Shown in pieces: positions 11,606 through 50,782 of a stretch of 64,000 nucleotides of DNA. Every line of letters begins with the position of its first letter. Position 1 is the stretch's first letter. Origin of the DNA: Entomortierella parvispora E1425 (lineage: Eukaryota; Fungi; Mortierellomycota); the NCBI GenBank assembly GCA_020891255.1, contig BQFW01000001.1, positions 992,001-1,056,000 of the forward strand. The letters are read 5' to 3'. The notes beneath the pieces are model-generated. The model did not search any database, was not told the origin of the DNA, and saw only the letters and a list, made by a program, of their open reading frames with translations. Both the position numbers and the translations under genes were made by a program.

Positions 11606-11791
11606 CAATTTTGCATGTGCATCGCTCACTATCTCTATACCGTCTCTTTAGGGGTAGAAGGGTAACTGCTTTGCTGCGTTTCTTTCCCCAAACCACAGCT
11701 CCTGAGGGAATTTCGCGACAGCGCGTGGCAGCACGTTCAACACTGGTAAACGACCTTGAATGTATAATCCAGAATTTTCCTGCCATGCCGT
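11606..11791 (-). pseudogene. Element F, degraded RNase H C-terminal/linker fragment
   Basis: The minus strand continues ...EMNSMLT from 20301 into W-QE...LDYTFKVVY...VLNVLP...FPQELW once E is removed. Confidence 0.75.
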
Positions 11792-12848
11792 TGTGGTGTA
11801 GTAGATGTGGAGTCCCGATCCACATCAATCGGAGTAGATATACATTTTCAGTAGCATTTATTATTTTGTTTAGTTTCAGTTTTTTTTCTATAAAGAAGGG
11901 AGCAAAATCCATTTTGCTCCTGGTTGCCTTTTTCCTTTACGATTCCTGCCAGTACACTTTTGTTGAACCCTTCAGAACACAAACACACATCCCCCCCTTC
12001 CTGCCCGATATCCCCTTTGCAGCAGCAGCAAGCTCGACGCCTTAATTCCGATTGCTGAGACTATTAGTAGCTAGTCTAAACCTCCTCCCCTTACCTTTGG
12101 ATATCACAGACCTATTGCGTTCTGTTGATCGACCTTGTACACTCACAAGTTACGATCTTCCCCGTCCTCGACAAGTCCCGTCAAGAACCTCGGCCAACCA
12201 GTTCTCCGTGTCCTTGCTCACTTACGAGGTACCAACAATGTCTTGTCTCTTTTGAGTGGACTTGTACGATCTTGGCATCCCACCCTGAGGCCTTAACTGG
12301 CGCTTGGGCACCCTGAGACCTTAACTGCCTTAACTGGTGCTTGGGAACCTCCCTTATCTTCTCGTCGCCTTCCCTCGAGTCCCTCCTGAACCCTCAGTTA
12401 GGCGGCCTTGTCCCCTTTCCCTGGATAGAATACTTCTAGCCTTGCTCTTACTGATTAGATCCCTTCAATCCTCCCTTGTTGTTGTTATTAGTTAGTATAG
12501 TACCTAGTGTTCGCCTCCGTAGTTGTTTATTCTCCTGTTTGGTTACCATTAGGACGTGCTTAGCTCATTGGTATGTCCTTATTAGTCTCCTTTCAGTTTC
12601 GTTCCTGCTTATATCGTGATCCTGTTGCTCATTCTCCTCCTCCTGTCTATCCAGTTCATTCTCTCGAGATTGTATCTGATCATATAGCAGTGCTGTGCTT
12701 GATCCTTGTGGCACAGAGAGCAAAGTCCCTATCATATGTAAGCAGCGAGCTTTGTTCGTTATTATTCTTTTCGTTATCATTTTCATCTCCAGCCTTTGCT
12801 GACGTTAGACTATACTTACTTTAGACAACATCACACCCGAAGCCAATT

Positions 12849-12866
12849 TGGTGGAGAACCTGGGCA
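12849..12866 (+). promoter_or_regulatory. Putative PBS of E (TGGTGGAGAACCTGGGCA), tRNA-Ala-like, 13 nt downstream of the LTR
   Basis: TGGTGGAGA is complementary to the typical tRNA-Ala 3' end ...TCTCCACCA. The cognate tRNA was not verified. Confidence 0.6.
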
Positions 12867-13015
12867 ATTACAAGCCCTCCCGTCTGAGATTAAAGAGAAA
12901 CTCTTCTTCTTTCCGATATCAACTTGAAACCAGTCTTCATTGGATTCCAACATGACCCCCGCGCAGCTCCGATAGTATCTCCGCGGACCGGTCCCCAGCC
13001 GCATCCACTAGCAGC

Positions 13016-14487
13016 ATGGAGAGTAGTGTGCCGGATATGCGTCCAGAAGGAGAGATCCCAGGTCACCTCAAAAACACACCTGAAATGTTTGTAGCCACGG
13101 ACAGAGAGAAATGGCTGATGGAAAGCACCCTTAGCAGGATGGAGAGCATGCTGTTGAACGTGCTGAAGCGTACGGAATTGGCAGCCGCTAATCGCCATCC
13201 CGAGTACGCTCAAACTGCCGATCCAGGACCAATCCCTGAATCCCACTCCCTCGTTACCGACGACTCAGCCGACCAGCCATTTCTCGACCCCCTTACAGGC
13301 CCTCTAACTTTGCCGACGGAAGGAGTCGAGAACGACTCGAACGTCCTTGGTCACGTGACGAACGCCCTCATGATCAGTATCGGACGCCTCCCAACGACTT
13401 CCATGGCAAGAAAGAACCTCGTGTATGTTCGGCTGGAAAGTTCAATCCTAAGAAACATAAAGCAGAGGTATGGCTGCATCAGTACCAATTGTGGGCTGGA
13501 ACGCAATTTACCAACATGAACCCACATACGGCCGCCTCTCGTACCATCGAATCGTTTGGAGCATCCATGGGAACAGACGAAACACAGGCATGGTTTGTAT
13601 ACTTTCTCGAAAATAACCGGGAGGTTCGCCCCGAAGGCCTCTACGAGGATTTCCGCAATACCTTCATGTCCGTTCGTGATCAGTTGCTCTCAGGATCCTT
13701 GGCGCAGTTGGACAAGTGCAAGCAGACAAAGAAAGAGTCGGTCCAGGCCTTCAACATCCGTTTTAGGATCCTAAACGAACAATATCAACAGGCTACTCGA
13801 CAAGGACTTGGTGTGTATGATGAAGCAGGCGTACGCAAAGCTTATCTCAAGAACTTGTTCCTTCCTGACATTGCCAAGGAGGTCCATCACCAGAACAAGC
13901 TTGAGGATATGATGGAGGAGGCCCATAAATGCTCTCGCAAGATGTACGAGTTGTATCTGGTACGACATAACGAGGAAACGGACGATACCGATGATGAAAG
14001 CGAGTCCAGCGATGATGACGATGATAAGAACCCGACTGCTAAGGACAAGCAAAAGAAGAAGGACCCGTTAGATGACCGTGGCAAATCTGAATCAAAGGCC
14101 GTCGGCTCCCCGTCCGTGAAACGCGACACCAAATCCTTTACCTCTGCCAAAAACAACTCGACTCAGAAGAATTTAGCTTCCAAGGACGACATCGAAGCTG
14201 TCACTCAGGAGCTGGACCGCCTGAAAATCCTCATCAGTAAGAGTAATCGAGTTACTCCTAGACCGGCTGGACCGCCCACCACTCGGTACTCAGGCGAGAA
14301 GAACCCCATGTCTGAGAGACAGTGTTACAATTGCCAACAGTTGGGACATATAGCCCGAGATTGCCCCGCGCAGAAGACACCTCAAACTTTGTTGGTCGAA
14401 GCCAGGATCGATGAAGGCGCTGGAGTTGAGGATTTCGACGTTCGCTGTTATTTCTTCGGATTTGTTGAAGTCGAAGTGGATTTTTAG
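13016..14487 (+). CDS. gag: Gag of E (one frameshift near 13200-13240)
   Basis: The gag frame is open from ~13240 to 14487 with CYNCQQLGHIARDC. The upstream ORF 13016-13519 probably supplies the N-terminus. Confidence 0.75.
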
Positions 14488-17400
14488 AAGGGGACCATGG
14501 AGAGACTCCAAACCATGAACCCCCTGACCCTATCCATGGAGAAAACACAGAAGAAGTAAGCGTACTGGTTGCTACTCGTCCCACTACCCGCAACCCTACC
14601 AGCTCGTTACCGTATGCAAAAGCGCCGCCGCCTCGAGGAGTGCCTCGCCCCAACGCTGCCACCCAAGTCCTGAAAAGACCACCTGCCATGACTACACGTG
14701 TTGGCCCATCTGCCATGTCGCATGTCAAAGCCCTCCAACATGCTGCGGCCAAGGCTCGCTCGATGGATGTCGATCCTCCTCCTCGACGAGAGATGATGAC
14801 CGCAGTGGAGATTCCCATCAAGCCCAAGGAGAGTGTCCCAAGTTCCATTGAAGGTCCATCTGCTGCGGAAAACTTGGCCCGGCTCGAACGAACCATCGCT
14901 GCACAAGATGCAATCAAGGCAACGAAGGGAATTGAGAGAGATGGGCGAGATGAGATGGAGGCGGACGACTCAGATGGCGGATTACGAAGGATGATGGTGC
15001 CGCCGAAGGAAAGTCGAAAAGTAATGGAGACAAGAAAAGTGAATGGAGGAAGAGATGATGGAACGAGCATGCGTGCGTCATCGGCCAAGAAGATCACATG
15101 GGAGGAAAAAGACCAGTCACGGCCACCCTCGCCCGAAAAGAAAAAAGAGAGCCGCAAGAACGACAAAAAAGGGGAGCAAAAGAAAAAAAAAACGGACGGA
15201 CCGGATCTTACCCTCGAGTCAGATGAGGCGTTTTTGAAGTCGTTACCCAATCCTATCGTGTTGCAGTTGAAGCAGAAACCTTTTGACATCCGTCAGTGCT
15301 TACGAACCACCAAAGTCGAAGGCTTAACCATCGGGCAACTGATGGAGTTGTCACCCAGCATTAGACGGACTGTACAAGCCTCGCTGAAAACTGTGCCGCG
15401 CGAGGAGCGAGTCCTACTCACTCAAGAATATCCCTCGTTATTACTGGGCGAGTCCGAAATAGAAGAGCTACGTGTTTTTCTGAACCGAGTGGAACGATCC
15501 AAAACCGACACCCATGGATTCAGAGCTGCCATCATGGGAACCAAGTGCGAGATTTTGTTGGATGGTGGCTCCTGTGTCAATGTTATCCGTCGTGGATTTC
15601 TCGATCAAATCGGGATAACCAACCACACACCTTACTCGTCATTTTCGTTGAAAGGTTTGACTGGAAACGCTGGAGTTGCTGGAGAAGCTCCGGGCGTTCC
15701 TATCGACATTCAAGGTATCATGATTCCAGCGGGCTGCGTGATTGTGGATTCTGTCGACTTCGATATTTTGTTGGGGCCGCCCATTTCTCGAGGCTTGCAG
15801 CGGATACACAAATTGGTCTACTGCTATCACTACCTTGCATGTCCAAGGATTCAAGGTCACAATTGATGGTCGCGCCCGCACCCTTCCGATCGTTTCTCGC
15901 GTTGACAACCAAGACGATACGAGTGAATCCGAAGCCGAACTCAGCGAAGACACGTCCGAGGATTCAGGTACCGATAACGAAGCGTCCTCCACCAGCGAAA
16001 AAGAAGATGGGGATGAAGGATACGCCCTCCTTATTCGAAACATCCAGGAAGGGAGGGTAGAGCGCACTACCGTGGAACAACTCAAGCAGGACGATGCCAA
16101 GGGAGACATTGTCAATTGTTGGTTTTTGCAAGCGGTTTTCCCAGAACCCCCTATTCCGGATGGTCGTCAACCTGTATCATGTCTCTCCGTTGTGGATGCT
16201 TCCCACCCGTCACCATCTGCTGAAATCAGTTCTATCTTCGACGCTTCTCCGATCATGGTGAATGACTCCTATGGTTTCCACCTGGAAGCACCACGTTGCC
16301 GAGACCGGTTGACTAACACTCCGGTCATGTTGCTGCCTGGTTTGGAGGAACGATCAGTGTATGTGGGAGACATACCGGAGGTGCATGATAATTTATCAGA
16401 AATTCGACGTATTTTCCAGAAACATGAGGAATGCTTTCCAAAGGAGGGCGAGATGTCAAGGACTCTGAACGCTGATATGTTGGAAGCACCCGCTTCTTTC
16501 CACCTCAAGCCTGGCTCAAAGTTTCCGCGTGCGTACAACAAGAAATATTCACCGGGTCAGATAACCACTTTATGTGAATATCGCGATCAAATGGTCAAGG
16601 CTGGAAAGATGAGGCGATCCAGCTCTCCTGCCTCCTGCAATCCGCTCTTAATACAAAAGAAGGATAACTCCTATCGGGTATGCGTTAATTTCATACCAGT
16701 CAACAAGTTGATTGCACCTATGGCATGGCCGCTACCGGATCCCATCACCGAGATATACAAGTTGCAAGGATGCGAGTTTTTGTCATTTTGGGATTGCAAA
16801 GATGGGTATCTTCAATCACCTATCGCCGAAGACAGTCGCTTCCTCACCGCCGTCGCCTTTCCGGATGGATTATACGAGTATAACGTATTGCCTATGGGAT
16901 TGATCGATTCTATGCAATGGTATACTCGCCACATGGGCGAGGTCTTCAGCACAATCAAGGAACGACTAGGGAATTTCGTGGACGACATGGCTACAGGCGA
17001 CGGCACCTTTCATCTCCATTTCCGCACCGTTGAAGAAGTGCTAGCCCGCATGGATATGTTCAACGGTTCGTTTTCAGGCAAGAAATCGGCGTTCTTTGTC
17101 AAACAGCGCGAGTTCTTGGGAAGGATTGTAGGAGATAGTCGGATCTCTGCGGACCCCAAGAAGCTATTCAAGATGGAATATTGGCCCGTGCCTCAGAATG
17201 TCACTGAACTACGCGGTTTCGTTGGTTTTGCTTTATTTTTGTGTGATTTCATATCCAACTTTTTCTGCAATGGCTGCCCCATTGTTTCCTCTGTACAAAT
17301 TGCACAAGGATCCAAACGCTTTTGTGGAAAAATGGATGTCAGATCCCAAATATATGAAAGCCTTCCGCGATATTCAGGTTGCTCTGGTCACCGCTCCAGT

Positions 17401-19178
17401 TCTAATTATGATGGACCATAAGAGACCGGTTATTATATCCGCTGACACGTCGGATTTCGCCACAGGGCATGTGGTTGCTCATTGTCTGAACCCAGAAGAT
17501 GACGATCGGATCGATATCAACGTCAAATATCAGCCCATTGTTTTTGGAAGCCGGAAATTATCGGGGGCCGAGTCTCGTTATTTTGCCACGGAGCGCGAAT
17601 TGCTAGGACTAGGGTATTGCCTCGTCAAGCACAGTCATCTGTTAGAAGGGAAGGAGATTCATGTCTTCATCGACCATCGGGCGTTGTTATACATGCATAA
17701 CCTTTCTTCGAGGAGCGCGCGACTCACTCGGTGGACATTAATCATCGCCCAATACCGGGTTACCATTCATCATCGACCCGGGCGGGACATGAAAGACTCC
17801 GATCCTTTATCTCGCATCCATCACAAGAATGTCACTGGGGAGGATCTACCGGACCTTGGGGTGGAGGAAGCCATTGAGATACAAGAAAACAAGAGGTTGA
17901 TGAGCACTTTGCTCATCTCGGAGGACCAAGAGCCATTCGTCTCAATTGTGGCTGCGTTACAAGGAGATCCTTTGACCTATTTGGACAAAAAATTCAAGGG
18001 GCAAAATTATGAGCATGCTACCCAAGTATTTTGTTGCTCAAGGTCGTCTATTCAAGCGCACGCCTGGCGGCATGCCTCGCCAATACGTGCCGCCTGGAGA
18101 AGTATCTAGGGTGTTAGAACGCGCTCATGGATCCACCATCGTCGGGCATCTGGGCGTAGTTTCGACCTATACTCTCATCGCCGAGGGATACTTCTGGCCT
18201 GGGATGTACAAGGACGTTAAGGAACACTTATCCAGCTGTGATGCATGTCAACGGTATCAGGCACGAGACCCCACCCGATATCGTTTCCATCGCATACCTC
18301 CGCCTCGAACTATCTTTGAGACTGTGGGACTAGATGCCGTCGGACCTTTGCCAATGTCCAATGGAAAGAGATTCGTTTTAAACATGGTGGATTATCTCTC
18401 CGGATGGGTTGTGTCCGTTGCATTGTCATCCTTGGCTGGAAACCTAGTCTTGCGAACAGTTGAAAAACATTGGGCGATGCAATATGGCCATCCTAAACGT
18501 ATCATCACGGATAATGGATCATCGTTGTCCGCAGGAGTCTTCAAAGCATGGTGTATCAAGCATATGATCGATCTGGATCCAGCTTCTGCATATCATGCAC
18601 AGACCAACGGAATGGTAGAGCGGTATAATGGTTTCATGGTGCGTCAAATGGCCCGTATCATCCAGCACGATGGATTACCAGAGAATGCGTGGGCTACCAT
18701 TCTGGATCGTGTTACCTGGACTTGGAGGACCCAGATCAAACAGACCCGGGGGGTTTCACCGTTCGAGATCCTTTTTGGGCAACGAGCCCGCCTTCCCTGG
18801 GATATCGATCTTAACCACAACATGGACTTGGAAGAACGTGAAGAGGTGGATGAGGAGAGACGGGAAATCTTGGGAGTTTTACGCGCGGAGGTTCATCAAA
18901 GGATCATAAATGAGCACAAATGGTCCACCGATGCAGCCGACCTCCCTCCCCCTCGACAGTACGAAGTTGGAGATGAGGTACTAGTACATCAATCCGCGCT
19001 TCTCAAGCAGTGGAGCGGTAAGCTCTCACCCAGATGGAAGGGACCTTACGTTATTGTTGAAGCTTTGCCCGGAGGAGCCTATCGATTGAGTGAAAAGATC
19101 GATGGACAATGGCATCGATATTATGGAGGTCGACCCGTTAACCACAGTCGCCTTAGACCGTATAAACGAACGACCTAG
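14478..19178 (+). pseudogene. pol: Pol of E (long N-terminal extension-PR-RT-RNaseH-INT), -1 frame relative to gag, three internal 1-nt shifts
   Basis: PR LLDGGSCVN, RT FWDCKDGY and FVDD, RNase H ADTS...FIDH, integrase HHCC/DDE (GLDA, TDNG, GMVER) and GPY. No chromodomain. Slippery G GAT TTT at 14478-14484. Confidence 0.88.
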
Positions 19179-20300
19179 TAGGATATGGGGATCAGCCCAC
19201 CAGAGACACTCACTGGCTTGCTCTCACATAGGAGGATGTGAGAAAGAGACCCTGGGATCGGTGTGGTGTAGTAGATGTGGAGTCCCGATCCACATCAATC
19301 GGAGTAGATATACATTTTCAGTAGCATTTATTATTTTGTTTAGTTTCAGTTTTTTTTTTCTATAAAGAAGGGAGCAAAATCCATTTTGCTCCTGGTTGCC
19401 TTTTTCCTTTACGATTCCTGCCAGTACACTTTTGTTGAACCCTTCAGAACACAAACACACATCCCCCCCTTCCTGCCCGATATCCCCTTTGCAGCAGCAG
19501 CAAGCTCGACGCCTTAATTCCGATTGCTGAGACTATTAGTAGCTAGTCTAAACCTCCTCCCCCCCTTACCTTTGGATATCACAGACCTATTGCGTTCTGT
19601 TGATCGACCTTGTACACTCACAAGTTACGATCTTCCCTGTCCTCGACAAGTCCCGTCAAGAACCTCGGCCAACCCGTTCTCCGTGTCCTTGCTCACTTAC
19701 GAGGTACCAACAATGTCTTGTCTCTTTTGAGTGGACTTGTACGATCTTGGCATCCCACCCTGAGGCCTTAACTGGCGCTTGGGCACCCTGAGGCCTTAAC
19801 TGGTGCTTGGGAACCTCCCTTATCTTCTCGTCGCCTTCCCTCGAGTCCCTCCTGAACCCTCAGTTAGGCGGCCTTGTCCCCTTTCCCTGATAGAATACTT
19901 CTAGCCTTGCTCTTACTGATTAGATCCCTTCAATCCTCCCTTGTTGTTGTTATTAGTTAGTATAGTACCTAGTGTTCGCCTCCGTAGTTGTTTATTCTCC
20001 TGTTTGGTTACCATTAGGACGTGCTTAGCTCATTGGTATGTCCTTATTAGTCTCCTTTCAGTTTCGTTCCTGCTTACATCGTGATCCTGTTGCTCATTCT
20101 CCTCCTCCTGTCTATCCAGTTCATTCTCTCGAGATTGTATCTGATCATATAGCAGTGCTGTGCTTGATCCTTGTGGCACAGAGAGCAAAGTCCCTATCAT
20201 ATGTAAGCAGCGAGCTTTGTTCGTTATTATTCTTTTCGTTATCATTTTCACCTCCAGCCTTTGCTGACGTTAGACTATACTTACTTTAGACGACATCACA

Positions 20301-20864: not shown

Positions 20865-21903
20865 TGTGATGTTGTCTAAAGTAAGTATAGTCTAACGTCA
20901 GCAAAGGCTGGAGGTGAAAATGATAACGAAAAGAATAATAACGAACAAAGCTCGCTGCTTACATATGATAGGGACTTTGCTCTCTGTGCCACAAGGATCA
21001 AGCACAGCACTGCTATATGATCAGATACAATCTCGAGAGAATGAACTGGATAGACAGGAGGAGGAGAATGAGCAACAGGATCACGATGTAAGCAGGAACG
21101 AAACTGAAAGGAGACTAATAAGGACATACCAATGAGCTAAGCACGTCCTAATGGTAACCAAACAGGAGAATAAACAACTACGGAGGCAAACACTAGGTAC
21201 TATACTAACTAATAACAACAACAAGGGAGGATTGAAGGGATCTAATCAGTAAGAGCAAGGCTAGAAGTATTCTATCCAGGGAAAGGGGACAAGGCCGCCT
21301 AACTGAGGGTTCAGGAGGGACTCGAGGGAAGGCGACGAGAAGATAAGGGAGGTTCCCAAGCACCAGTTAAGGCCTCAGGGTGCCCAAGCGCCAGTTAAGG
21401 CCTCAGGATGGGATGCCAAGATCGTACAAGTCCACTCAAAAGAGACAAGACATTGTTGGTACCTCGTAAGTGAGCAAGGACACGGAGAACGGGTTGGCCG
21501 AGGTTCTTGACGGGACTTGTCGAGGACAGGGAAGATCGTAACTTGTGAGTGTACAAGGTCGATCAACAGAACGCAATAGGTCTGTGATATCCAAAGGTAA
21601 GGGGGGGAGGAGGTTTAGACTAGCTACTAATAGTCTCAGCAATCGGAATTAAGGCGTCGAGCTTGCTGCTGCTGCAAAGGGGATATCGGGCAGGAAGGGG
21701 GGGATGTATGTTTGTGTTCTGAAGGGTTCAACAAAAGTGTACTGGCAGGAATCGTAAAGGAAAAAGGCAACCAGGAGCAAAATGGATTTTGCTCCCTTCT
21801 TTATAGAAAAAAAAACTGAAACTAAACAAAATAATAAATGCTACTGAAAATGTATATCTAGTCCGATTGATGTGGATCGGGACTCCACATCTACTACACC
21901 ACA
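20865..21903 (-). repeat. Solo LTR D3, TSD ACGT
   Basis: Complete D LTR with ACGT at 20861-20864 and 21904-21907. The F reading frame resumes on both sides. Confidence 0.95.
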
Positions 21904-22576: not shown

Positions 22577-23447
22577 TGTGATGTTGTCTAAAGTAAGTAT
22601 AGTCTAACGTCAGCAAAGGCTGGAGGTGAAAATGATAACGAAAAGAATAATAACGAACAAAGCTCGCTGCTTACATATGATAGGGACTTTGCTCTCTGTG
22701 CCACAAGGATCAAGCACAGCACTGCTATATGATCAGATACAATCTCGAGAGAATGAACTGGATAGACAGGAGGAGGAGAATGAGCAACAGGATCACGATA
22801 TAAGCAGGAACGAAACTGAAAGGAGACTAATAAGGACATACCAATGAGCTAAGCACGTCCTAATGGTAACCAAACAGGAGAATAAACAACTACGGAGGCG
22901 AACACTAGGTACTATACTAACTAATAACAACAACAAGGGAGGATTGAAGGGTTCTAATCAGTAAGAGCACGGCCAGAAATATTCTATCCAGGGAAAGGGG
23001 ACAAGGCCTCCTAACTGAGGGTTCAGGAGGGACTCGAGGGAAGGCGACGAGAAGATAAGGGAGGTTCCCAAGCACCAGTTAAGGCCTCAGGATGCCCAAG
23101 CACCAGTTAAGGCCTCAGGATGCCCAAGCGCCAGTTAAGGCCTCAGGATGGGATGCCAAGATCGTACAAGTCCACTCAAAAGAGACAAGACATTGTTGGT
23201 ACCTCGTAAGTGAGCAAGGACACGGAGAAGTGGTTGGCCGAGGTTCTTGACGGGACTTGTCGAGGACGGGGAAGATCGTAACTTGTGAGTGTACAAGGTC
23301 GATCAACAGAACGCAATAGGTCTGTGATATCCAAAGAGGAGGAGGTTTAGACTAGCTACTAATAGTCTCAGCAATCGGAATTAAGGCGTCGAGCTTGCTG
23401 CTGCTGCAAAGGGGATATCGGGCAGGAAGGGGGGGATGTATGTTTGT

Positions 23448-26400
23448 TGAAAAGTATATGGCACACGGAGTCAGTGAGAATAAGAGAGGGATCTCTGTTT
23501 TATTGAACCGGTCAGGATATTATCCTGACCGTTGCCTCCGTGACTGTGCCTTGCTGCCAGCAGCATCATTTGCCGCTGCGCCACCAAATTATGCGACAGA
23601 ACTTCCCCTCCCATGGAGAGCGAAGCGCGGGTTGACACTACTGGTCAGTGAGAGGGTAAAAAATAAAACCTCTATGAAAATGTTATGGTTGAGGAAAAGT
23701 GAAAAACCTCTTGTCTTTGAGGAAAACCATGTGGTAAAAAACCTCTTTGCCTGTTAGGTCTTCTTTGCGTAGTAGCGTTTTAGTTCCTCGTTCTCGTTTG
23801 GTATCTCTTCGATCTTTGATCCTGTGGTCGCTTATTTTCTTTGAGAAGTTGCCAATATTCTCTGATACATTGTTTTTCAATAAAGTTTTCTTCAGGTTCC
23901 CAAGTGTAGTCATCTTTGGAGTAGCCAGCCCATTTTGCTTTGTATTCCCACTCCCCCTTTCGAGAAGGATGAGGACGGTGGTCGAGAATGTACTCGATCT
24001 CGAATATGGGCAGCGTATTTAAATCCTCGAGTACGAGTTTGAGCTGGGATGGGGCATAGTTGCGACTGAGCGACTCGCCTGTACCATCTCTGAGCTCATA
24101 AGATCCACCGGTCGTGCGGCGCACTACTGTGTACGGGCCTTCATACCGTGGCGTAAGTTTATTACCGCGGATGGGATCAAGTGTCATGACTTTTGCGCCA
24201 TCAGGGAATTCATTATGCAGAACTGTGGCATTGAATCGGGCGATCATTTTCTTTTGAGTCTCTTCTGATTTCTTGTCAATCGCTGGAAAGACAATTTCAG
24301 TCATGTATGCGAGACGATCACAGAGCTGCTTGTGGGTCATGACGTTCTTGGTAGATTTGGAGTAATTTTGGAAGCCATTGGCCTTGCGAGCGAAGAAGAG
24401 AGAGAACGGTGATGAATTATGGAGAGCAACGATTCTTGTATTCATTGCAAGCTGTGCCATGGGTACATGAAGGTCCCAAGTATCTTGTTTCTGATGATGT
24501 TCTTTCTTGAGGATGTCGACTGCGACTTTGACATGTCGTTCAGCAACGCCGTTTCCTCGAGGGTGATACGGCGTAAGTAGCCGGTGGTCAACGTTAAATT
24601 CAGAGGTCATTGCAAGCATGACTTGGTTCACAAATTCCCTGCCGTTATCGGATTGTAAAACGCGAGGAAAGCCAACGGTACAAAATATATCAAACAGGGC
24701 TTTAGCGACAGTGTTTGCTTGTTTATCAGGGGAGCGCTCTTAAGAAGACGAAGCGTGTGCATACGTCGACTACGATAAGAAGGATTTCATTGCCTTTCTT
24801 TGAGAGTTTGAACGGTCCCGCTAAATCCATAGCCATATGATCTCCTGGCAGGTTTGCGTGGATAGCTTTTAATGGATGATAGCCTTTGATACTAATATTG
24901 TACTTCTGACATTCCGAGCATTTCTTAACCCAGTTCAAGCAGTCATCTGTGAGATGGGGCCATGTGTATTGTTCCGCATGTATAGACCGGACCATTGCAT
25001 TCGCTCCAAGGTGGCCGAGGGCGTGGGTTTTGTACAATATATCGTCCTGCTTCTTTTTGCCATGAACGACTTCTAACATTGTGTCTTTGTTTTGCATGAT
25101 GTGCATGTAAGCGTTGACTATGTGCCCATGGTTGGAGTCGTAGCGAGTCTGGATGGAGGCTGGGAACAGTCTAGACAAGTGATCTGGCAACACATTCATC
25201 ACTCCAGGTCGGTATTCGACCGTAAAGTCATAACTCAGGATTGTTTCATGCCAGCCAGTGAGCATGGAGTTTAACTCTTTCTGCGAGTGAATGAACGTAA
25301 GTGCTCGGTGATCTGTATACAGTGTAAAGTGTCTTCCCCAGAGGTAATAGTGGAATTTCGTGAGTGCAAACACGATTCCTAGCAATTCTTTTTGTGTGGC
25401 TGAATACCGTCGTTCTCTGTCTTGTAGAGAGCGTGCCATGAAGGATATGTATCTGTTCTCCCATTTTTTCTTGGATTCATTCCTGACTTTCTGGTAAAGG
25501 ACCGATGCAATGCCTACGTTGGATGCGTCAGTGGCGACGTAGAACGGCAGACCGAAGTCAGGGAAGTGCAAGATTGGTGCATGGCTTAGCAGTTTCTTGA
25601 ATGTATTGAAAGCATCGAGTTCGTCTGCATTGAGTTTGAACACTTTTGTTTCATGCCTCAACTTATCCAATGGCGCTGCCAACGTACTGAACAGCGGGAT
25701 GAATTCTCGAAAGAAATTAAATGTGCCCATGTAGGACTGAATCTGATTGCCTGTGGTTGGTGGAACCCACTGGTCGATATTGGCTAGCTTGGTAGGATCT
25801 ACCCGTTTGCCAGCCAAGTCAATGACAAAGCCGAGAAGTACAATCTGTGTTGCGAAGAAGTGTGATTTTTCTGGGTTGATAATAAGCTTTGCTTCTGTTA
25901 GGCGTTCGATTACACACTTGACGTGCGCTGCATGCTCTTCCTTGGTCTTGGAGAAAATAACGATGTCGTCAATGAACACCAGGACAAAGGGCAAGTCCCC
26001 CAAGATGCGTGTCATTCCGCGTTGGAATATGCTTGACAGTGGCTTAAGTCCGAATGGAGCTCGTCGGAACATATATTGAGTTCCTCGGTGCATGAATGCA
26101 GTGAGTGGTTGATGTCCTGCTTCGATAGGTAACCGGTGATATGCTTGTGTCAAATCGAGCGTTGTATAAATCATGTGGCCACCTATCTGTTGTAAGATGT
26201 CCGATATTAATGGTACTGGATGGTTGTCATCCTTTAATAATTTGTTCAGAGGACGTGGGTCTAGGCAAACCCGCCATTTCGTTTTATTGCCGAGGAGATC
26301 TTTCTTGGCCGCGAGAGTTAGCGTGTTATTGTGCCGATTGTTGGCCGGAGCAAGTGTGATAACTCCATCTTTAAGCCATTTGTCAACTTGTTCGTCGAAA

Positions 26401-29400
26401 ATATGCTGTTGCTGTTCAGCAAAAAGTCCTTGGTCTGCGATAAATTGTCGTGCCATCAGGAACATCCAAGAACACGTGCATCTCTGGTAGAGTGCAGTAG
26501 CTGTCTAGCGGTATCTGTGCGTTGTCCTTTATCGAGTCTTGGATTTCACTCATGAATTGTGCTTTGAGTTTCTTGAACTTGTCAGTCAGTTCTTCGATTG
26601 GTGTTTCCAATGGTAACACGGATGGCTTTTCATCTGGTGTTGGCGTTGGCAGAGTCTGTGCGTTTGCTCGTCCGTCTGCAATGCCTCCGATTGAGAACCC
26701 TAGTTTGTTAAATAGGTCCATGCCAATGACAAATGGGTATTGTAGGTCAAACAGTTCAAATGAGGCGAGAAGCGAATGTTCATTGCATTCTACTTCTATA
26801 TGTTCTGTTACTCCTGTTCTTGCTACATGCATTTTCTTGTGCCCGAGGAAGATGTTTCCCCGTGCTTTGCTGACCTCAATTTTCAGAGCTTCTACTAATG
26901 ACTTGTCTATGAATGACTTCGTGGCTCCAGAATCAATTAGTGCTTCAAATTGAAGGCCTTCGAAGTAGATCGGTACTACAAGTCTCTTGTCATTGTCGTT
27001 CTGGTCACCCATTTCATTGTATATAAGTGTTTCAAACATGTGTGATTGCTCATCGTTTATTGTCATGTGCTCCTGTGGTATGTCTTGTGACATTCTACTT
27101 TCCCTCCCCGCATGTGCCAGGACTGAATCTGTGGAGTGAACAGACTCTATGAATTCTTTATCTGACACTGGCGGCATGTCTCTAGTCTGAGAGGAGTAGG
27201 ACGCAAGAGTGAGTGCGTTGAAGTTGATATCAAGATCGTGGTATGTTTGCCACACATTTTTACGAGAGCGTAGTATATGAAGAGGGTCCTTACTGTAATT
27301 GCGCTCACGAGAGTTGTGGCTATCCCTGTTGTCTCTGCGCTGGCGATTGTCAGCTTGATATGGCCCGAAGCGGCTTGATCCGCGGTGGGACCGGTCTTGT
27401 CGATCGTCTGAGCTGTGTGAGCTACGCTCCGAGTGTTCATTGCGTCGTCGTTCGTCGTTCTGGCGCGCACGGCAGGCGTCCTTCTTATGGCCTAGCTTGT
27501 TGCAGTAGTCGCAGCTGATATGGTCCTTGGAAACGTGGTTGCCGTTCTTGTTACATTTATCACACCACATCTGCTTCGACTCAGCCTTGGCGGCGTGAGA
27601 GTTGGTGGTGGGCATTACTGGAGCGCTAAAGTTTTCGCGAGCTCCAGCTGGTCCTGTTAGCTTGCCCAGTGCGATACAAAAATCAGCGATAGAGCAATTG
27701 GAGTGTCTGGCACTGATGTTGCTTGTGGGTTGTCCAGTACGTATTGCGATTGGAATCGCGTGTTGACTGTGTCCATTTCAGATGATGCAAGTCCTTGTCG
27801 AAGCAGAGTCAAAACCACATCGTTGTTGTCTTGTACTCGGAATAGCTTTGTAGCTCTTGCGATCCGATGAGCGTAGTGACTATATGGCTCTCCTGCGAGT
27901 CGTCCAAATTTGGTGAGCGTGGTAACAGCGTTTTCTCGCTCTTCGATTGTTAAACATGTCTCGAAGAACGTCCTCTCGAGATAGTCCACTGTCAGCACCT
28001 CCTTGGGTGCCTTGAACTTCTCTTTCAGATTGGCATGAAAGTGGTCGTTGTGGACCAGGTACAGGAGGTATTTGTCTCCATGACTTCCTATGATTTGCTC
28101 CCCCACATACGGCGCGATTTCTCGTTCGAAGTGCGCCCACCAGTCGTATGCCGATAGGGATCCTGATGATCCGAATCGAAGCCATGTGGATAGAGGCTTG
28201 ACAGGAAATCCTGCCTCAGATCGCGCTTGTGGAGCATGGTTGCTTGCGCTTCGATCCTGCTCTTGATAACGGTCTACGGTGGACTGATTTGGATATGCCC
28301 ATTGTGCTGGTACAGGGCGGCGAGCTGCGTGAAGAGCATTGTATGTTTGCTCCATACTGCTGAGGAAGTCCTCGTTGCGCTTATGTTCTTCCTCCATCTT
28401 GTCTGTTTCCGGTGTGAGGTCCATGGGAGCTGTACCGGCATGGGTGACTCTTTTGTTACGTGAGATATGTAAAAGGAGTCTTACATTGGTGAGCCGAGTA
28501 GCTTCCATCTGTGCGTACGTTGCCGCAATGTCTGCCTCTATTTCCGCATCTGTTATGTCAGGCAGGGCAGTATGGGTAGGTACCGCCAAGGCTCTGGTGA
28601 TTGATACGACCGATGTAGGACTATCCTTTCTTGGAATAGATGGCAACTGTGACGGTGGTAGTCCTTCAAACGTCAGTCCACTTCTGGTGCCAGAGCTGGT
28701 GGATGGAATGGTTTCCTCGTCCACATCCATCTCTTCTGTGATGGATCCTTCGTGTGTGGCTACAGTGGCCAAGTCTCCGCCATTGTTGGTGGGTTCTCCA
28801 GAGTTGGAGGCAGTGGCGCGCGCGTTGGCGGCTTGTGCAACAGGTATAACAACTGCAGCGACTCTGCTCCGAATTGGTTTGTTGTTGTTGAGATTCACTT
28901 TGCCCATGTCGCGAAAAATTTTTCCCAGCTGAATTGACTTAATGCCGGAATGAACTGAATGTCGAAAAGTTCACCAAAGTCCATGAGCGGTGGCTTGCGT
29001 GCAGTAAGTGGTGTTCTGGTAACTTTCAAGGGTCCTGAAAGCGATGCTGTGTTCCGTTTAGATGGATGGGTCGGATTGACGGGTGAATTGGCGTTCCAAA
29101 GTTGATCTCAGTTAAATCGAGTGGAATTAACTTGCGGAATGTGAGATGCAGGTCAATGCTGGTGAATGTCGTCGCAGACAGTGAAGAAATGCTGTTGATC
29201 GGTCGAGTGCTGACGAGTGCGGTTGAATGGAGGTGAATGCCGGTTGTGAATGTCGGTTATGTTCCTGATCCTGCGAGATCTTCTTCTCTTCACTGAAAAA
29301 AATGAAAAGTATATGGCACACGGAGTCAGTGAGAATAAGAGAGGGATCTCTGTTTTATTGAACCGGTCAGGATATTATCCTGACCGTTGCCTCCGTGACT

Positions 29401-29453: not shown

Positions 29454-29646
29454 TTTGTGTTCTGAAGGGTTCAACAAAAGTGTACTGGCAGGAATCGTAA
29501 AGGAAAAAGGCAACCAGGAGCAAAATGGATTTTGCTCCCTTCTTTATAGAAAAAAAAACTGAAACTAAACAAAATAATAAATGCTACTGAAAATATATCT
29601 CTACTCCGATGGATGTGGACCGGGACTCCACATCTACTACACCACA

Positions 29647-34700: not shown

Positions 34701-34739
34701 GCGGTCAGGGGTGCGGGGCGATCTCGAGAAGGGTTGTTA

Positions 34740-36353: not shown

Positions 36354-36354
36354 T

Positions 36355-44031: not shown

Positions 44032-44540
44032 TGTGGTGTAGTAGATACGGATCACACATTTGTAGAAGTCAGTTTAGATACCCTTAAAAGATTGCGTTAA
44101 TATAATTTCGTGTTCAGAGCAGTAATTGCTCTGGGTCGCTTCCTTCCCTACTTTTTCGTTTGCTTTTGTTTGATCGTTACAGAACACATACACATCTCCC
44201 CCCCCCACTTCCTGCCCGATATCCCCTTTGCAGCAGCAGCAAGATCGACGCCTTAATTCCGATTGCTGAGACTATTAGTAGCTAGTCTAACCTCCTCCTC
44301 CCCCCTTTACCTTTGGATATCACAGACCCTGTTCTGCCGATCAAGCTTGCCTTCGTACAAGTCTTGAGCTTCCACCGGACTGAGATCTTTATTGATACTT
44401 GGTTCACACAGTTTAGACAGTGAGATCCTGCAACGTCTATCCTCCCCCTCGCAAGCAATCCCCTTTCCCTTGATCACTTGTGACCAGCCCCTCTCTCCTT
44501 GAGCTACGACCGATCCCCAACCCATTGTAGCAACACCACA
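44032..44540 (+). repeat. Solo LTR C4, TSD GCGC
   Basis: GCGC at 44028-44031 and 44541-44544. Confidence 0.95.
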
Positions 44541-46777: not shown

Positions 46778-47786
46778 TGTGGTGTAGTAGATGTGGAGTC
46801 CCGGTCCACATCCATCGGAGTAGAGATATATTTTCAGTAGCATTTATTATTTTGTTTAGTTTCAGTTTTTTTTCTATAAAGAAGGGAGCAAAATCCATTT
46901 TGCTCCTGGTTGCCTTTTTCCTTTACGATTCCTGCCAGTACACTTTTGTTGAACCCTTCAGAACACAAACATACATCCCCCCCTTCCTGCCCGATATCCC
47001 CTTTGCAGCAGCAGCAAGCTCGACGCCTTAATTCCGATTGCTGAGACTATTAGTAGCTAGTCTAAACCTCCTCCCCCCCTTACCTTTGGATATCACAGAC
47101 CTATTGCGTTCTGTTGATCGACCTTGTACACTCACAAGTTACGATCTTCCCTGTCCTCGACAAGTCCCGTCAAGAACCTCGGCCAACCCGTTCTCCGTGT
47201 CCTTGCTCACTTACGAGGTACCAACAATGTCTTGTCTCTTTTGAGTGGACTTGTACGATCTTGGCATCCCACCCTGAGGCCTTAACTGGTGCTTGGGAAC
47301 CTCCCTTATCTTCTCGTCGCCTTCCCTCGAGTCCCTCCTGAACCCTCAGTTAGGCGGCCTTGTCCCCTTTCCCTGATAGAATACTTCTAGCCTTGCTCTT
47401 ACTGATTAGATCCCTTCAATCCTCCCTTGTTGTTGTTATTAGTTAGTATAGTACCTAGTGTTCGCCTCCGTAGTTGTTTATTCTCCTGTTTGGTTACCAT
47501 TAGGACGTGCTTAGCTCATTGGTATGTCCTTATTAGTCTCCTTTCAGTTGCGTTCCTGCTTACATCGTGATCCTGTTGCTCATTCTCCTCCTCCTGTCTA
47601 TCCAGTTCATTCTCTCGAGATTGTATCTGATCATATAGCAGTGCTGTGTTTGATCCTTGTGGCACAGAGAGCAAAGTCCCTATCATATGTAAGCAGCGAG
47701 CTTTGTTCGTTATTATTCTTTTCGTTATCATTTTCACCTCCAGCCTTTGCTGACGTTAGACTATACTTACTTTAGACAACATCACA
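46778..47786 (+). repeat. Solo LTR D5, TSD ACGG
   Basis: ACGG at 46774-46777 and 47787-47790. Confidence 0.95.
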
Positions 47787-50489
47787 ACGGCAAGATGGTT
47801 CAACGCTATCTTGGCATGTTCAATTACTTCCGAGAGTTTATCCCTCTCTACTCCACCTTGGCTGCTCCACTAGACGAACTCCGATTTCGTAGAGGCTCGT
47901 TCGAGCTTTCACCACTTCAACTTGAATGCTTCACGCAGATCAAAGAGTTGATCAGCCGCGCACCAGTCCTCTCTTTCCCGGACTTCACTCAACCGTTCTA
48001 CGTTGCTACAGACGCGTCTAATCTTGGACTTGGCACTGTCCTGTACCAACTCCCCAATGGCCCTGGTGACGAATCTGTGGTTAACTACATTTCGTTCATG
48101 GCTCGCTCGTTAAAAAAACATGAGCGTAACTACCCTGCCTATAAGAAAGAGTTACTTGGTATAGTCTACGCCCTCAAGAAGTTTCATTACTACTTGTGGG
48201 GTCGCCACTTCACGCTGTACACAGACCACAAGCCTCTTACTTTCATCCAGAATCAGACTGATCTACCTACAACTATTGCCAATTGGACAGAGACAATCCT
48301 CAGCCATGACTTTGAGTGTATCTATCGTCCTGGTGTGCTCAACATCATTCCTGATGCCTTATCGAGAGCATTCCCTAAGGAACTCTGGACTCACTCCTCT
48401 GAACCGTCCTCTGAACACAGAGACAAGCGTCGCAAGACAGCTGCGGTCACCACTCGTCGTGGATTCCGCCCAACGGTCCCTGAAAATAATGATCAAACTT
48501 TATCTGTCTCGTCTGAGCAATTGGGCAATAACCTCTCTGATCCCTCAGCACCCTTCGTGCATCAGATGCAATTAGCCGAAGACGCTATGACCATCCCTAA
48601 AGAATCTGAACGATCTGATCTTCTCCAGAAGACTCATGGCGATGCTCACCTTGGAGCCAACGCCATGGTCAGCGCCCTGCATTTGCAAAAGTTGACTTGG
48701 CCAAAACTCAAAGATGCATGTCTAAACTTTATCCGAAAGTGTACGGCTTGCCAGCACTTCAACATCGGAAGAAAAGGGTACCACCCTCTCAAAGCTGTCC
48801 ACGCCACCTTCCCTGGTGAACATCTAGCTATAGATCTTGCTCAATTTCAGCAGAGTTCTAACAACCACGTCTACGCCCTAGTCGTCGTTGACGTCTGCAC
48901 CCGCTTTGTCTTCTTACGTCCCCTCAAGACGAAAGAGGATTCTGTAATCGCTAGAGAGCTCTTCACGCTCTTCAGTGATATTGGCCCTCCAAAGATCGTA
49001 CAGACAGACAACGGCTCGGAATTTTCTAATCTATTGTTGGACTCAGTTCTAACGCTTCTCCAAACGCAACATCGTTTGTCAACCCCTTACCACCCTCGCG
49101 GTAATGGCATTGCTGAACGACTTGTTCGCTCATCCAAGGAATTGCTGCGCAAAGTGCTCCACGGCAAAGTCCTTGACTGGGACTCGTACCTCCCAGCAGT
49201 TCAATTCTCTCTCAACACTAAAGTAGCGAGTCTACACAGTTCCACTCCATTTTCTCTATTCTATGGCCGCGCTTATTCAAGCGTCAGCAACTTCAAACAA
49301 ATCAAGTCTGAACTCCTCACTCCCGAAGATCTGGACGATCGTCTTGAGTATCTCACAAACATTGTCTTCCCCGCTATCTCTGAAAAGAGCAAAGCCAGCC
49401 AGAAACAAATGGTTGACAAGTTCAATCGCTCTCACCATATCACAGAGTTTCCTGTTGGATCATTTGTCATGACCAAAGACATGGAAGCCACTGGCTCTCT
49501 TGATGCACGCTACGACGGCCCTTACAAAGTTGTCGCGCGCACTTCTCATGGCACTTATACTCTGAAGGATACCACCAACACCATCCTCTCTCGCAACTTT
49601 GCACCCGAGCAATTGAAGCTCGCCCTCCGCGATGACGAAGAAGAAGACAACAACAGTTATGAACTCGAAAAGATCATTGGGCACCGTGATATTGCCCCTG
49701 GGGAGACGGTTTACATGGTTAAATGGAAGAACTACGATAGCTCACACAACCAAGAGTTGCCAGAATCCGCTTTCAACTCCAAAACAATCATTCCACGCTA
49801 CTATAGACAATTGCAAAAAACGAATCCTGAGCTCGTGCCCGCCAACAGGATGCAGCCCGAACCCAAAGCTAAAATCAAGAGCACAGGTCCCGCTGCGAAA
49901 AAGAAATCTGTCACCTTCGCACAGACAACCAAGGCCGTCACGACAAGAACAACACGCTCGACTCGACCCAGTACCAACAAATAGCTCCTGTTCGAAGAAT
50001 CCCGCTTCGAGGTTTTTGCACGCTTACGACCCTGGTCGTTTGAACGTTTTCCTCACCCTTTCCTTCGTACAGACATGGGTTTTTCTCATTTTCCCATTCG
50101 CACAACTTCAATTGAGGTTTATTATTTTGCCCTCTTCATTTTCTCTTCTGAGGTTTTCTTCTTTTTCTCCTCGCACAACCAAATTAATTCTTTTGAGTTT
50201 ACTTCTTTCTCAAAATCTGAGGTTTTTACGTCCTTTTCCTCAACGGTCATCCTCTCTCGAGCACCTCCCTGGACCTAAAAACTCGCCGGGGGCTTCTGTG
50301 CCGGATCAGGCCTCTGACCCTTAATTTTTAGTTGACGAAGATATATCAGCGCCTCCAGCGCTCTCTCATTAAAACAGATCTCTTCTTCCGTCTCGTCATT
50401 ACTCGTACCCATACTTACTCACGTTGACGGGGACCCCCTGCCCCGCACAGTAGGTACACATCGCGTGATGTCACCGTATTCCTGTTACA

Positions 50490-50782
50490 CATAGGTCGAG
50501 CTTATGATTATACTTCCCGGCGCCCTCCCTAACACAACGCAGACTAGGTCCAGGCCCGCACCTCTCTCTAGTATAAAACCCCCCTTGATTCATAGCTGTA
50601 TTCCCCAGTCTGCAATTCACAATTCCCAATAAACCATACCTTCCCTCTTTCTCTTGTTCCTGCCTTGTCCAACCGTGACAGCAATCCCCTTTCCCTTGAT
50701 CACTTGTGACCAGCCCCTCTCTCCTTGAGCTACGACCGATCCCCAACCCATTGTAGCAACACCACACCGTATTCCTGTTACA
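50490..50782. repeat. Stacked LTR right halves: H (50490-50680), C5 (50681-50766), A LTR end (50767-50782)
   Basis: Each fragment matches the corresponding complete LTR elsewhere in the window. The right flank of C5 is CCGT. Confidence 0.88.

What the first reader, a model, noticed from the sequence alone, without database searches (positions are those of the whole stretch)
11788..50770. LTR family E/C/D integrates exclusively into CpG-centred 4-bp sites
Seen: every readable junction of the TGTGGTGT-ended C/D LTRs has CG at positions 2-3 of a 4-bp flank. Six full TSDs are CCGT (E), ACGT (D3), GCGG (C2), GCGG (C3), GCGC (C4) and ACGG (D5). Four single flanks are ACGG (5914), TCGG (22573), GCGG (29647) and CCGT (50767). 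That is 10/10, roughly (1/16)^10 under uniform base composition. All other LTR families here make 5-bp TSDs with no consensus (TTTGT, GTGAT, TACGG, GTAGG, ACTGT). The older D-like remnant at 50974 has CTGG, as expected from a deaminated CCGG. Known: sequence-specific 4-bp TSDs occur in some insect errantiviruses (gypsy, ZAM), whereas chromoviruses target heterochromatin via chromodomains. E has no chromodomain. Inference: this integrase reads CpG, possibly methylated CpG, as an alternative route into silenced TE clusters. I do not know of a described fungal example.
Basis: partly seen in the sequence, partly recalled or inferred. Interest (0 to 1): 0.82.

Follow-up and report, generated by a model that had tools for sequence, protein, structure and literature searches.

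The report
Fungal retrotransposon that inserts at CG
A young Ty3/Gypsy retrotransposon family in the soil fungus Entomortierella parvispora almost always inserts at four-base sites with CG in the middle. This is an unusually sharp integrase site preference, but nothing here links it to DNA methylation.

Summary
All ten window junctions read as stated.

**Sample.** I examined 319 kb from 15 contigs, holding 124 LTR ends.
- Of 111 outward flanks, 93 have CG at positions 2-3. Another 16 have TG or CA. Background CG frequency is 4.8%.
- 39 insertions have perfect 4-bp duplications: 34 CG and 5 TG/CA, with no non-pyrimidine-purine centre.
- Uninterrupted paralogous copies of the host repeats confirm the pre-insertion 4-mer for 25 events. 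They show that TG/CA sites were real targets, not decayed CpG.

**Controls.** Four other LTR families in the same clusters make 5-bp duplications with no shared motif.

**The family.** E is an 8.5-kb Ty3/Gypsy element with no env gene and no chromodomain. It is intact in two copies. C is its 2.57-kb non-coding passenger.

**The motif.** The site reads T-R|V-C-G-B|Y-A. This is a sharpened form of the foamy-virus/MLV integrase consensus.

**Methylation.** The methyl-CpG idea is disfavoured. The genome has only one short, DNMT2-like cytosine-methylase locus. LTR copies show no CpG hypermutability. CpG density is the same inside and outside the clusters.

**Clustering.** The family sits in one cluster per contig, and CG preference cannot explain that.

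**Verdict.** This is a new variant of a known kind.

The parts
11792..20300 (+). Element E: full-length Ty3/Gypsy copy. The 5' LTR is 11792-12835 and the 3' LTR is 19262-20300. The gag-PR-RT-RH-IN region is broken by frameshifts in this copy. The 4-bp duplication CCGT lies at 11788-11791 and 20301-20304.
   Evidence: the two LTRs are 98.1% identical
20865..21903 (-). D3: solo LTR of the E type, with duplication ACGT on both sides (20861-20864 and 21904-21907).
22577..29646 (-). E-type LTR split in two (22577-23447 and 29454-29646) by a nested 6.0-kb element of another family at 23448-29453. That nested element has 151-bp LTRs and the 5-bp duplication TTTGT. The outer flanks are TCGG and GCGG on the + strand; they are unequal but both CG-centred.
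31173..31679 (+). C2: solo C-type LTR of 507 bp with duplication GCGG. Thirteen uninterrupted paralogous host-repeat copies carry a single GCGG at this place.
   Evidence: contigs from four runs join 31168 to 31680, skipping 511 bp with 4 shared letters
34194..34700 (-). C3: solo C-type LTR with duplication GCGG on the + strand (CCGC in the element's own orientation).
   Evidence: a joint 34189 to 34701 skipping 511 bp appears in two runs
44032..44540 (+). C4: solo C-type LTR with duplication GCGC.
46778..47786 (+). D5: solo E-type LTR with duplication ACGG. It is nested inside a 7.65-kb element of another family at 42797-50449, which has the 5-bp duplication GTAGG.
5410..5913 (+). C-type LTR lacking its first 9 bases. 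Its 3' flank is ACGG.
50680..50766 (+). The last 87 bases of a C-type LTR, with 3' flank CCGT. An older E-like LTR end at about 50972-51003 on the - strand has flank CTGG.

Best explanation
**What it is.** E is an autonomous and apparently still active Ty3/Gypsy retrotransposon.
- It is 8.5 kb long with about 1.04-kb LTRs. It encodes a gag of 518 aa and a PR-RT-RNaseH-IN pol of 1568 aa.
- It has no env gene and no chromodomain.
- D copies are its solo LTRs.
- C is a 2.57-kb non-coding passenger. It keeps only E's LTR ends, the PBS region, the PPT and a 128-bp LTR segment, so it must be moved by E's proteins.

**How it chooses sites.** The E integrase cuts the target with a 4-bp stagger. It chooses sites of the palindromic form T-R | V-C-G-B | Y-A.
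- Per available site, a CG centre is used about 18 times more than expected.
- TG/CA centres are used at about background rate.
- TA and every non-pyrimidine-purine centre are used essentially never.

**Relation to known integrases.** The motif has the shape of the weak consensus of retroviral integrases that make 4-bp duplications, such as prototype foamy virus (KWK|VYRB|MWM). There the target is bent sharply at a flexible central pyrimidine-purine step, and an arginine of the C-terminal domain reads the edges and positions -2/+5. Here the central step is narrowed from YR to CG.

**Shown and inferred.** The preference, its symmetry and its restriction to this family are shown. It is inferred that each of the two inner integrase protomers adds a base-specific contact favouring C over T in its half-site, on top of the need for a bendable step.

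**Clustering.** The family's restriction to one TE cluster per contig is a separate property of unknown cause. It could be a tether or selection. CG preference does not explain it.
For: **Family-specific rule**
- 93 of 111 flanks and 34 of 39 matched duplications have a CG centre, against 4.76% background.
- The rule holds for both LTR types: 17 of 18 D/E events and 17 of 21 C events.
- Nine control insertions of four other families in the same clusters have 5-bp duplications with no motif.

**The 4-mers are target duplications**
- Uninterrupted paralogous host copies carry a single copy of the 4-mer for 25 of 39 events.
- Assembled contigs skip the LTR plus 4 bp.

**Motif shape**
- T is never seen at position 0 (0 of 38) and A almost never at position +3 (1 of 38).
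- T is favoured at -2 and A at +5; G/A at -1 and C/T at +4.
- This matches the PFV/MLV pattern described in PMC4422553.
- The best solved-structure match of the E integrase is PFV integrase (E 1e-23), ahead of Ty3 (1e-18).

**Bendability alone is not enough**
- All 39 centres are YR, but CG takes 34 of them. CG makes up only 20% of the available YR steps (p about 7e-19).
- TA makes up 18% of YR steps and was used 0 times.

**The family is young and likely active**
- Two copies have intact gag and pol.
- LTR pairs are 99.8-100% identical.
- C LTRs are 99.3% identical pairwise.
Against: - No integration assay, no de novo insertions and no structure with target DNA exist. The base-specific contact is therefore inferred.
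- All sites lie in a special compartment of nested repeats, so a chromatin or host-factor contribution to the local motif cannot be excluded.
- Relatives in other genomes could not be tested for the same rule.
Confidence: 0.8

Rival explanations
1. The integrase, or a partner protein, reads methylated CpG. In this reading 5mC both sets the local site and guides the element into silenced TE clusters.
For: - The centre is CG and the minor targets are TG/CA. T carries the same 5-methyl group as 5mC.
- All copies lie in gene-poor TE nests.
Against: - The genome has one short PF00145 locus (C5:618789-620299), spanning about 1.5 kb. No DNMT1-RFD match was found anywhere. No BAH or SNF2 hit lies near the locus, so it looks like DNMT2, an RNA methylase.
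- A 2026 review states that early-diverging fungi, including Mortierellomycota, have near-undetectable 5mC (PMC13297926).
- CpG columns of the LTR alignments show transitions in 10-12% of columns, against 4-11% for other C/G columns.
- CpG observed/expected is 0.82 inside the nest and 0.67-0.87 in the flanks.
Confidence: 0.05
2. The motif is pure shape readout. The integrase needs only the most deformable central step and makes no base-specific contact.
For: - All 39 centres are pyrimidine-purine steps.
- This is the accepted explanation for the central YR of PFV, MLV and HIV sites (PMC4422553).
Against: - TA and TG/CA are also flexible YR steps and together are four times as common as CG here. 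Yet CG takes 34 of 39 and TA none.
- Retroviral YR enrichment is reported as only about 63% over random, not about 18-fold for one dinucleotide.
Confidence: 0.06
3. A host CpG-binding factor, for example a CXXC-type protein bound in the clusters, tethers the intasome. In this reading the factor sets both the region and the local site.
For: - Regional confinement to one cluster per contig needs some tether or filter.
- Tethering by host factors is the rule for Ty1, Ty3, Ty5, Tf1, MLV and HIV (established knowledge; PMC5408687).
Against: - A tether rarely fixes the cut to the base. Here CG sits exactly at the dyad of the 4-bp stagger, with a palindromic motif extending to -2/+5. That is the signature of the symmetric intasome itself (PMC3276498).
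- CpG density does not differ between the clusters and their flanks.
Confidence: 0.05
4. The pattern is an artefact. Possible sources are misplaced LTR boundaries, copies multiplied by segmental duplication, or decay after insertion.
For: The insertions sit in repeats that are themselves multi-copy, and one pair of sites is identical over 36 bp.
Against: - The outer duplicated bases vary and match on both sides, so the boundaries are fixed.
- 38 of 39 sites are unique.
- Paralogous empty sites show one copy of the same 4-mer.
- The copies are too young to have decayed.
Confidence: 0.02

Closest known systems
Target-site consensus of retroviral integrases with 4-bp duplications (prototype foamy virus, MLV, PERV, XMRV): (-3)KWK|VYRB|MWM(+6)
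   Same: - 4-bp stagger and a palindromic motif.
- T is avoided at position 0 and A at +3.
- T and A are favoured at -2 and +5.
- The centre is a pyrimidine-purine step (against PMC4422553).
- PFV integrase is the best solved-structure match of the E integrase.
   Different: - In retroviruses the consensus is weak, with central YR use only about 63% above random.
- Here the centre carries about 1.7 bits per position and is CG in 87% of insertions.
- E is a fungal retrotransposon, not a retrovirus.
Drosophila errantiviruses of the ZAM subgroup (ZAM, Tirant), reported to prefer the palindrome CGCG
   Same: Ty3/Gypsy superfamily, 4-bp duplication and a high-information, GC-type palindromic target (PMC5408687).
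   Different: - Errantiviruses carry env and have AGT...AnT LTR ends. E has no room for env and has TG...CA ends.
- E fixes only the central CG and excludes T/A at the edges (VCGB), not CGCG.
- No Drosophila protein appeared among the 65 integrase relatives found.
- The review calls sequence-specific integration exclusive to errantiviruses. This case would be an exception.
Clade-specific palindromic target-site motifs of Drosophila LTR families (412, gypsy and Idefix clades)
   Same: It follows the same general rule: the motif is a palindrome that extends beyond the duplication and is shared within a clade (PMC3276498).
   Different: Those motifs are AT-rich (ATAT, TATA). This one is CG-centred and comes from an early-diverging fungus.
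Centromere-associated or heterochromatin-targeted Ty3/Gypsy elements (plant CR elements and fungal chromoviruses)
   Same: Copies are confined to one gene-poor TE cluster per chromosome-scale contig.
   Different: - E has no chromodomain.
- No centromere has been mapped in this organism.
- The local CG rule has no counterpart in those families, which make 5-bp duplications (my own knowledge, not tested here).

Membership tests
Ty3/Gypsy (Metaviridae) LTR retrotransposon | Pol domain order protease - reverse transcriptase - RNase H - integrase, with a gag carrying a CCHC zinc knuckle | tested here: met
   Pfam hits in that order on the intact 1568-aa pol and on the window fragments. zf-CCHC is present in gag.
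Ty3/Gypsy (Metaviridae) LTR retrotransposon | LTRs ending TG...CA, a tRNA-type primer-binding site and a polypurine tract | tested here: met
   The ends are TGTGG...CACA, and GGGATCGG lies before the 3' LTR. A TGGTGGAG... PBS is present but sits 12-13 nt after the LTR.
Chromovirus | Chromodomain at the integrase C-terminus | tested here: not met
   No PF00385 hit at E up to 0.1. Pol ends 29 residues after the SH3-like domain.
Errantivirus (ZAM/Tirant type with CGCG targets) | Third ORF (env) and AGT...AnT LTR termini | tested here: not met
   Gag and pol fill nt 1157-7398 of the 8548-nt copy, and the 3' LTR starts about 86 nt later. The termini are TG...CA.
Errantivirus (ZAM/Tirant type with CGCG targets) | 4-bp duplication with a high-information palindromic target | tested here: met
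   39 of 39 matched duplications are 4 bp. The motif is TR|VCGB|YA.
PFV/MLV-class target recognition (4-bp stagger) | V at 0, YR at +1/+2, B at +3, and T/A at -2/+5 | tested here: met
   Position counts, compared with PMC4422553.
Methyl-CpG-directed integration | The host maintains CpG methylation: a DNMT1 or DNMT5 class enzyme and CpG hypermutability in the targets | tested here: not met
   There is one short PF00145 locus without RFD, BAH or SNF2 beside it. There is no clear excess of CpG transitions. Methylation itself was not measured.
Centromere-specific retrotransposon | One cluster per chromosome that coincides with CENP-A or kinetochore chromatin | tested here: inconclusive
   90 of 91 exact 5' ends lie in one 20-60-kb cluster on each of contigs C1-C15. 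Kinetochore association cannot be tested with these tools.
Non-autonomous LTR element (LARD/TRIM-like) for the C type | LTRs, PBS and PPT are present, there is no coding capacity, and the ends are shared with an autonomous partner | tested here: met
   The element is 2569 bp with 509-bp identical LTRs and no ORF over 72 aa. It shares only the termini, PBS region, PPT and a 128-bp LTR segment with E. Three copies were found.

The most novel reading that the evidence does not exclude
The E integrase reads the central CpG by direct base contacts. This gives about 20-fold discrimination against TG/CA and complete exclusion of TA and non-YR steps. It also works together with a chromodomain-independent tether that restricts the family to the centromere-like TE cluster of each chromosome. 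That would be a two-layer targeting system not described in fungi, and the first sequence-specific LTR integrase outside the insect errantiviruses.
Probability: 0.35. Interest if true: 0.65.

Novelty: new variant of a known kind. Interest (0 to 1): 0.5.

Why it matters
- **Target reading.** Integrases of retroviruses and LTR elements are thought to read target sequence only weakly. The strong exceptions known so far are insect errantiviruses. A fungal Ty3/Gypsy integrase with a near-obligate CG at the dyad of a 4-bp site gives a simple natural system. It allows a direct test of how the central step of the target is recognised, as flexibility or as base contact.
- **Engineering.** Such an integrase could inform the engineering of integrases with narrower site choice.
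- **Annotation.** TSD-based LTR finders that assume 5 bp will mis-handle this family.
- **Centromeres.** The one-cluster-per-contig distribution flags candidate centromeres in Mortierellomycotina, where I found no centromere description.
- **Methylation.** The more exciting methyl-CpG reading is unlikely in this organism.

Tried and rejected
1. **Remaining clusters.** About half of the roughly 91 copies were therefore not read.
2. **Metagenome scan.** Scanning for the 15-nt LTR start gave 120 hits. None had any further LTR similarity, so all were chance matches.
3. **Relatives.** Contigs encoding relatives of E pol (integrase 46-83% identical) are collapsed gag-pol or pol-LTR-gag assemblies. 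They have no LTR pairs or flanks, so the rule could not be tested in other genomes.
4. **Deamination as the source of TG/CA centres.** Rejected. Both copies of the duplication agree, paralogous empty sites already read CTGG, CCAC and GTGG, and the copies are 99-100% identical.
5. **Tf1-like self-priming.** I tested it as an explanation for the PBS offset. No complement of the LTR-adjacent 8-14 nt exists in the LTR.
6. **Protein atlas look-up.** It returned only generic Gypsy integrase clusters.
7. **Named Ty3/Gypsy phylogeny.** Not attempted, because no reference clade sequences are available in these tools. Outside the Mortierellaceae-like group the nearest integrases are at most 31% identical.
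8. **Literature.** Searches for a described fungal or CG-centred LTR case found none. Searches for Mortierella centromeres found nothing relevant.


Full report
**What is in the window.** The window is G000:C1:992001-1056000 of a 38.9-Mb, 20-contig genome.
- A protein 98% identical to part of E's integrase is annotated in Entomortierella parvispora.
- Positions 1 to about 51,100 are a nest of retrotransposons inserted into one another.
- The motif TGTGGTGT occurs 14 times, against 2.3 expected. It marks the ends of two LTR types.
- The 'C' LTR is 507 bp and ends ...CAACACCACA. The 'D/E' LTR is 1.01-1.07 kb and ends ...CAACATCACA. Both begin with the same 15 bases.

**The elements.**
- E (window 11792-20300) is a Ty3/Gypsy element. 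It has a gag with a CCHC knuckle, then protease, RT, RNase H and integrase (H2C2 zinc domain, rve core, SH3-like C-terminal domain). It has no chromodomain and no room for env.
- The window copy is frameshifted.
- Copies at C2:2202479-2211026 and C6:428899-437453 have an intact gag of 518 aa and an intact pol of 1568 aa. Their LTR pairs differ only by one or two gaps.
- The C LTRs belong to a 2,569-bp element with identical LTRs and no ORF above 72 aa. It shares with E only the LTR termini, the PBS region, the PPT and a 128-bp LTR segment. Three copies were seen.
- C is therefore a non-autonomous passenger of E, and D copies are E's solo LTRs.

**Checking the observation.**
- To go beyond ten junctions I located the family in the whole genome. 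I read 319 kb: the window, 30 loci around C LTRs on 15 contigs, and 185 kb of the clusters on contigs C2-C7.
- These hold 124 LTR ends. Thirteen abut the element's own PBS or PPT, and 111 face host DNA.
- Of the 111 outward flanks, 93 have CG at positions 2-3. Nine have TG, seven CA, one TA and one other.
- CG makes up 4.76% of dinucleotides in the same DNA (p about 1e-103).
- Thirty-nine insertions have identical 4-bp flanks on both sides. They comprise 33 solo LTRs (two of them split by a nested insertion), three full E copies and three C elements. Of these, 34 have CG and 5 have TG/CA.
- Thirty-eight of the 39 sites are unique.
- Both LTR types obey the rule: 17 of 18 D/E events and 17 of 21 C events.

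**The 4-mers are true target duplications.**
- The hosts of these insertions are themselves multi-copy repeats, so I searched the same 319 kb for uninterrupted copies.
- For 25 of the 39 events, such paralogous 'empty sites' exist. They carry one copy of the 4-mer at the expected place, usually at 98-100% identity.
- Assembled contigs from four public runs in four studies join window 31168 to 31680, skipping the C2 LTR plus 4 bp with 4 shared letters. Two runs do the same for C3.
- These contigs may come from paralogous copies rather than from other strains. I count them only as agreement.

**Controls.** Nine insertions of four other LTR families lie in the same clusters. All have 100% identical LTRs and all have 5-bp duplications: TTTGT, GGTGT, TACGG, CTTTA, TCTAA, ATTCA, TATGG, GTAGG and GGTCA. 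They share no motif. The CG rule belongs to the E/C/D family, not to the compartment.

**The exceptions.** The data point the other way.
- In all five TG/CA events, both copies of the duplication agree.
- The uninterrupted paralogues already read CTGG (7 copies), CCAC (9) and GTGG (1).
- The copies are too young for such decay. C LTRs are 99.3% identical pairwise and LTR pairs are 99.8-100% identical.
- TG/CA centres are therefore real minor targets.
- Per available site, CG is used about 18 times more than expected. TG/CA is used about as expected. TA was used 0 of 39 times (it is 4.3% of dinucleotides). Non-YR steps, 77% of dinucleotides, were never used.
- Read as two half-sites, 73 of 78 carry C, five carry T and none carries a purine.

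**The full motif and how it most likely works.**
- The aligned sites give T (53%) at -2, G/A at -1, never T at 0, then C and G, almost never A at +3, C/T at +4 and A at +5. This is a palindrome about the dyad of the 4-bp stagger.
- This is the shape of the consensus published for prototype foamy virus, (-3)KWK|VYRB|MWM(+6). It also fits the common features of 4-bp-duplication retroviruses: T/A disfavoured at 0/+3, T/A preferred at -2/+5, and YR at the centre.
- In the PFV target-capture complex, the central YR step is unstacked by a severe bend. Arg329 of the C-terminal domain reads the edges and positions -2/+5 (PMC4422553).
- PFV integrase is also the best solved-structure match of E's integrase (E 1e-23, against 1e-18 for Ty3). 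The residue aligned with PFV Ala188 is Ser, as in HIV-1.
- The best-supported mechanism is an ordinary symmetric intasome of this class. Its need for a bendable centre has been narrowed to CG.
- Flexibility alone cannot do that. TA and TG/CA are also flexible and together are four times as common. I therefore infer an added base-specific contact in each half-site. That step is inferred, not shown.

**The methylation idea.**
- The genome has a single PF00145 (C5 cytosine methylase) locus, C5:618789-620299, spanning about 1.5 kb.
- No DNMT1 replication-focus domain was found anywhere. That search has no positive control, because the control genomes are prokaryotes.
- None of the five BAH hits or the 43 SNF2 hits lies near the locus. 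It looks like DNMT2, which mainly methylates RNA.
- A 2026 review states that early-diverging fungi, including Mortierellomycota, have near-undetectable 5mC (PMC13297926).
- Among the LTR copies, CpG columns carry transition variants in 4 of 41 (C) and 12 of 96 (D). Other C/G columns show 8 of 204 and 44 of 395. There is no strong CpG hypermutability.
- CpG observed/expected is 0.82 in the nest and 0.67-0.87 in its flanks.
- Methylation was not measured, so the idea is disfavoured rather than excluded. I give it about 5%.

**Regional confinement is a separate matter.**
- Ninety of 91 exact copies of the LTR start lie in one 20-60-kb cluster on each of contigs C1-C15. On C3 and C7 the cluster is at a contig end. 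The one exception is C10:21829.
- CpGs are equally frequent outside the clusters, so the CG rule cannot be the route into them.
- A tether, or strong selection against insertions elsewhere, is needed. E has no chromodomain, only a short basic tail after the SH3-like domain.
- One cluster per chromosome-scale contig suggests centromeres. Other readers of the scan raised the same idea for other windows. No kinetochore data exist, and I found no paper on centromeres in this group.

**Comparison with what is known.**
- Palindromic, clade-specific target motifs that extend beyond the duplication are the rule for LTR elements in Drosophila, but there they are AT-rich (PMC3276498).
- Strong specificity, including CGCG for the ZAM subgroup, is described as exclusive to errantiviruses and their derivatives (PMC5408687).
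- E fails the errantivirus membership test: it has no env and its ends are TG...CA. It fails the chromovirus test: it has no chromodomain.
- Outside a group of unnamed soil and metagenome relatives (integrase 46-83% identical), the nearest integrases are at most 31% identical and mostly from animals.
- I could not place E in a named clade, and I could not test relatives for the same rule.
- Four literature searches found no fungal or CG-centred LTR case. That is not proof that none exists.

**Verdict.**
- The inference of an integrase-intrinsic CG preference is well supported.
- 'Exclusive', 'deaminated' and 'methylated CpG as the route into clusters' are not supported.
- This is a new variant of a known kind: a sharpened, CG-centred version of the 4-bp integrase target motif, found in an early-diverging fungus.
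- Interest is moderate.

Noticed in passing
window 12836-12870 (also L045 and the C10 copy): The tRNA-type primer-binding site (TGGTGGAGAACCTGGGCAA) starts 13 nt after the E LTR and 12 nt after the C LTR, instead of the usual 0-5 nt. A test for Tf1-like self-priming was negative.
   Followed up: partly
G000:C12:1011513-1014433 (L020, L026, L029): Two inverted C LTRs carry swapped flanks, TCGG/TCGT and TCGT/TCGG. This is the pattern expected from an inversion by recombination between two inverted solo LTRs. Seven further LTRs have unequal flanks, nearly all still CG-, TG- or CA-centred, which fits recombination between different copies.
   Followed up: partly
G000:C4:1237471, C13:2001258, C2:2200222; also C1:1026700 and C9:275912: The same position of a multi-copy host repeat was hit twice, once by a D LTR and once by a C LTR. 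A third insertion lies 10 bp downstream. Another pair of C LTRs shares an identical 36-bp site on two contigs. This suggests hot spots beyond the 8-bp motif, or a segmental duplication for the second pair.
   Followed up: partly
window 23448-29453, 37117-42181 and 42797-50449; also C2, C5 and C6 clusters: Four other LTR families (LTRs of 111, 151, 153 and 215 bp) have 100% identical LTR pairs and 5-bp duplications. Several families in these clusters therefore look very recently active.
   Followed up: partly
G000:C5:1300756-1301813: A tandem array of about 112-bp units, each holding the first 40 bases of the LTR, lies next to a diverged C-like LTR. It is 200 kb away from the C5 cluster.
   Followed up: no
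G000:C5:618789-620299: This is the only match to the C5 cytosine-methylase family in the genome. It is short and has no RFD, BAH or SNF2 domain nearby, so the fungus probably lacks a DNA CpG-methylation system.
   Followed up: partly
L051-L054 (soil and other metagenome contigs); runs X3-X8: Relatives of E pol (integrase 46-83% identical) occur in soil metagenomes as gag-pol contigs, one of them (L054) assembled circularly permuted as pol-LTR-gag. Mine-drainage metagenomes hold about 30% of the words of a 5-kb stretch of this window, which suggests close relatives of this fungus there.
   Followed up: no
contigs C1-C15, one place each (for example C2:2.18-2.24 Mb, C6:0.42-0.47 Mb, C12:0.99-1.05 Mb): The family marks one 20-60-kb gene-poor TE cluster per large contig. 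These are candidate centromeres of a Mortierellomycotina fungus.
   Followed up: partly
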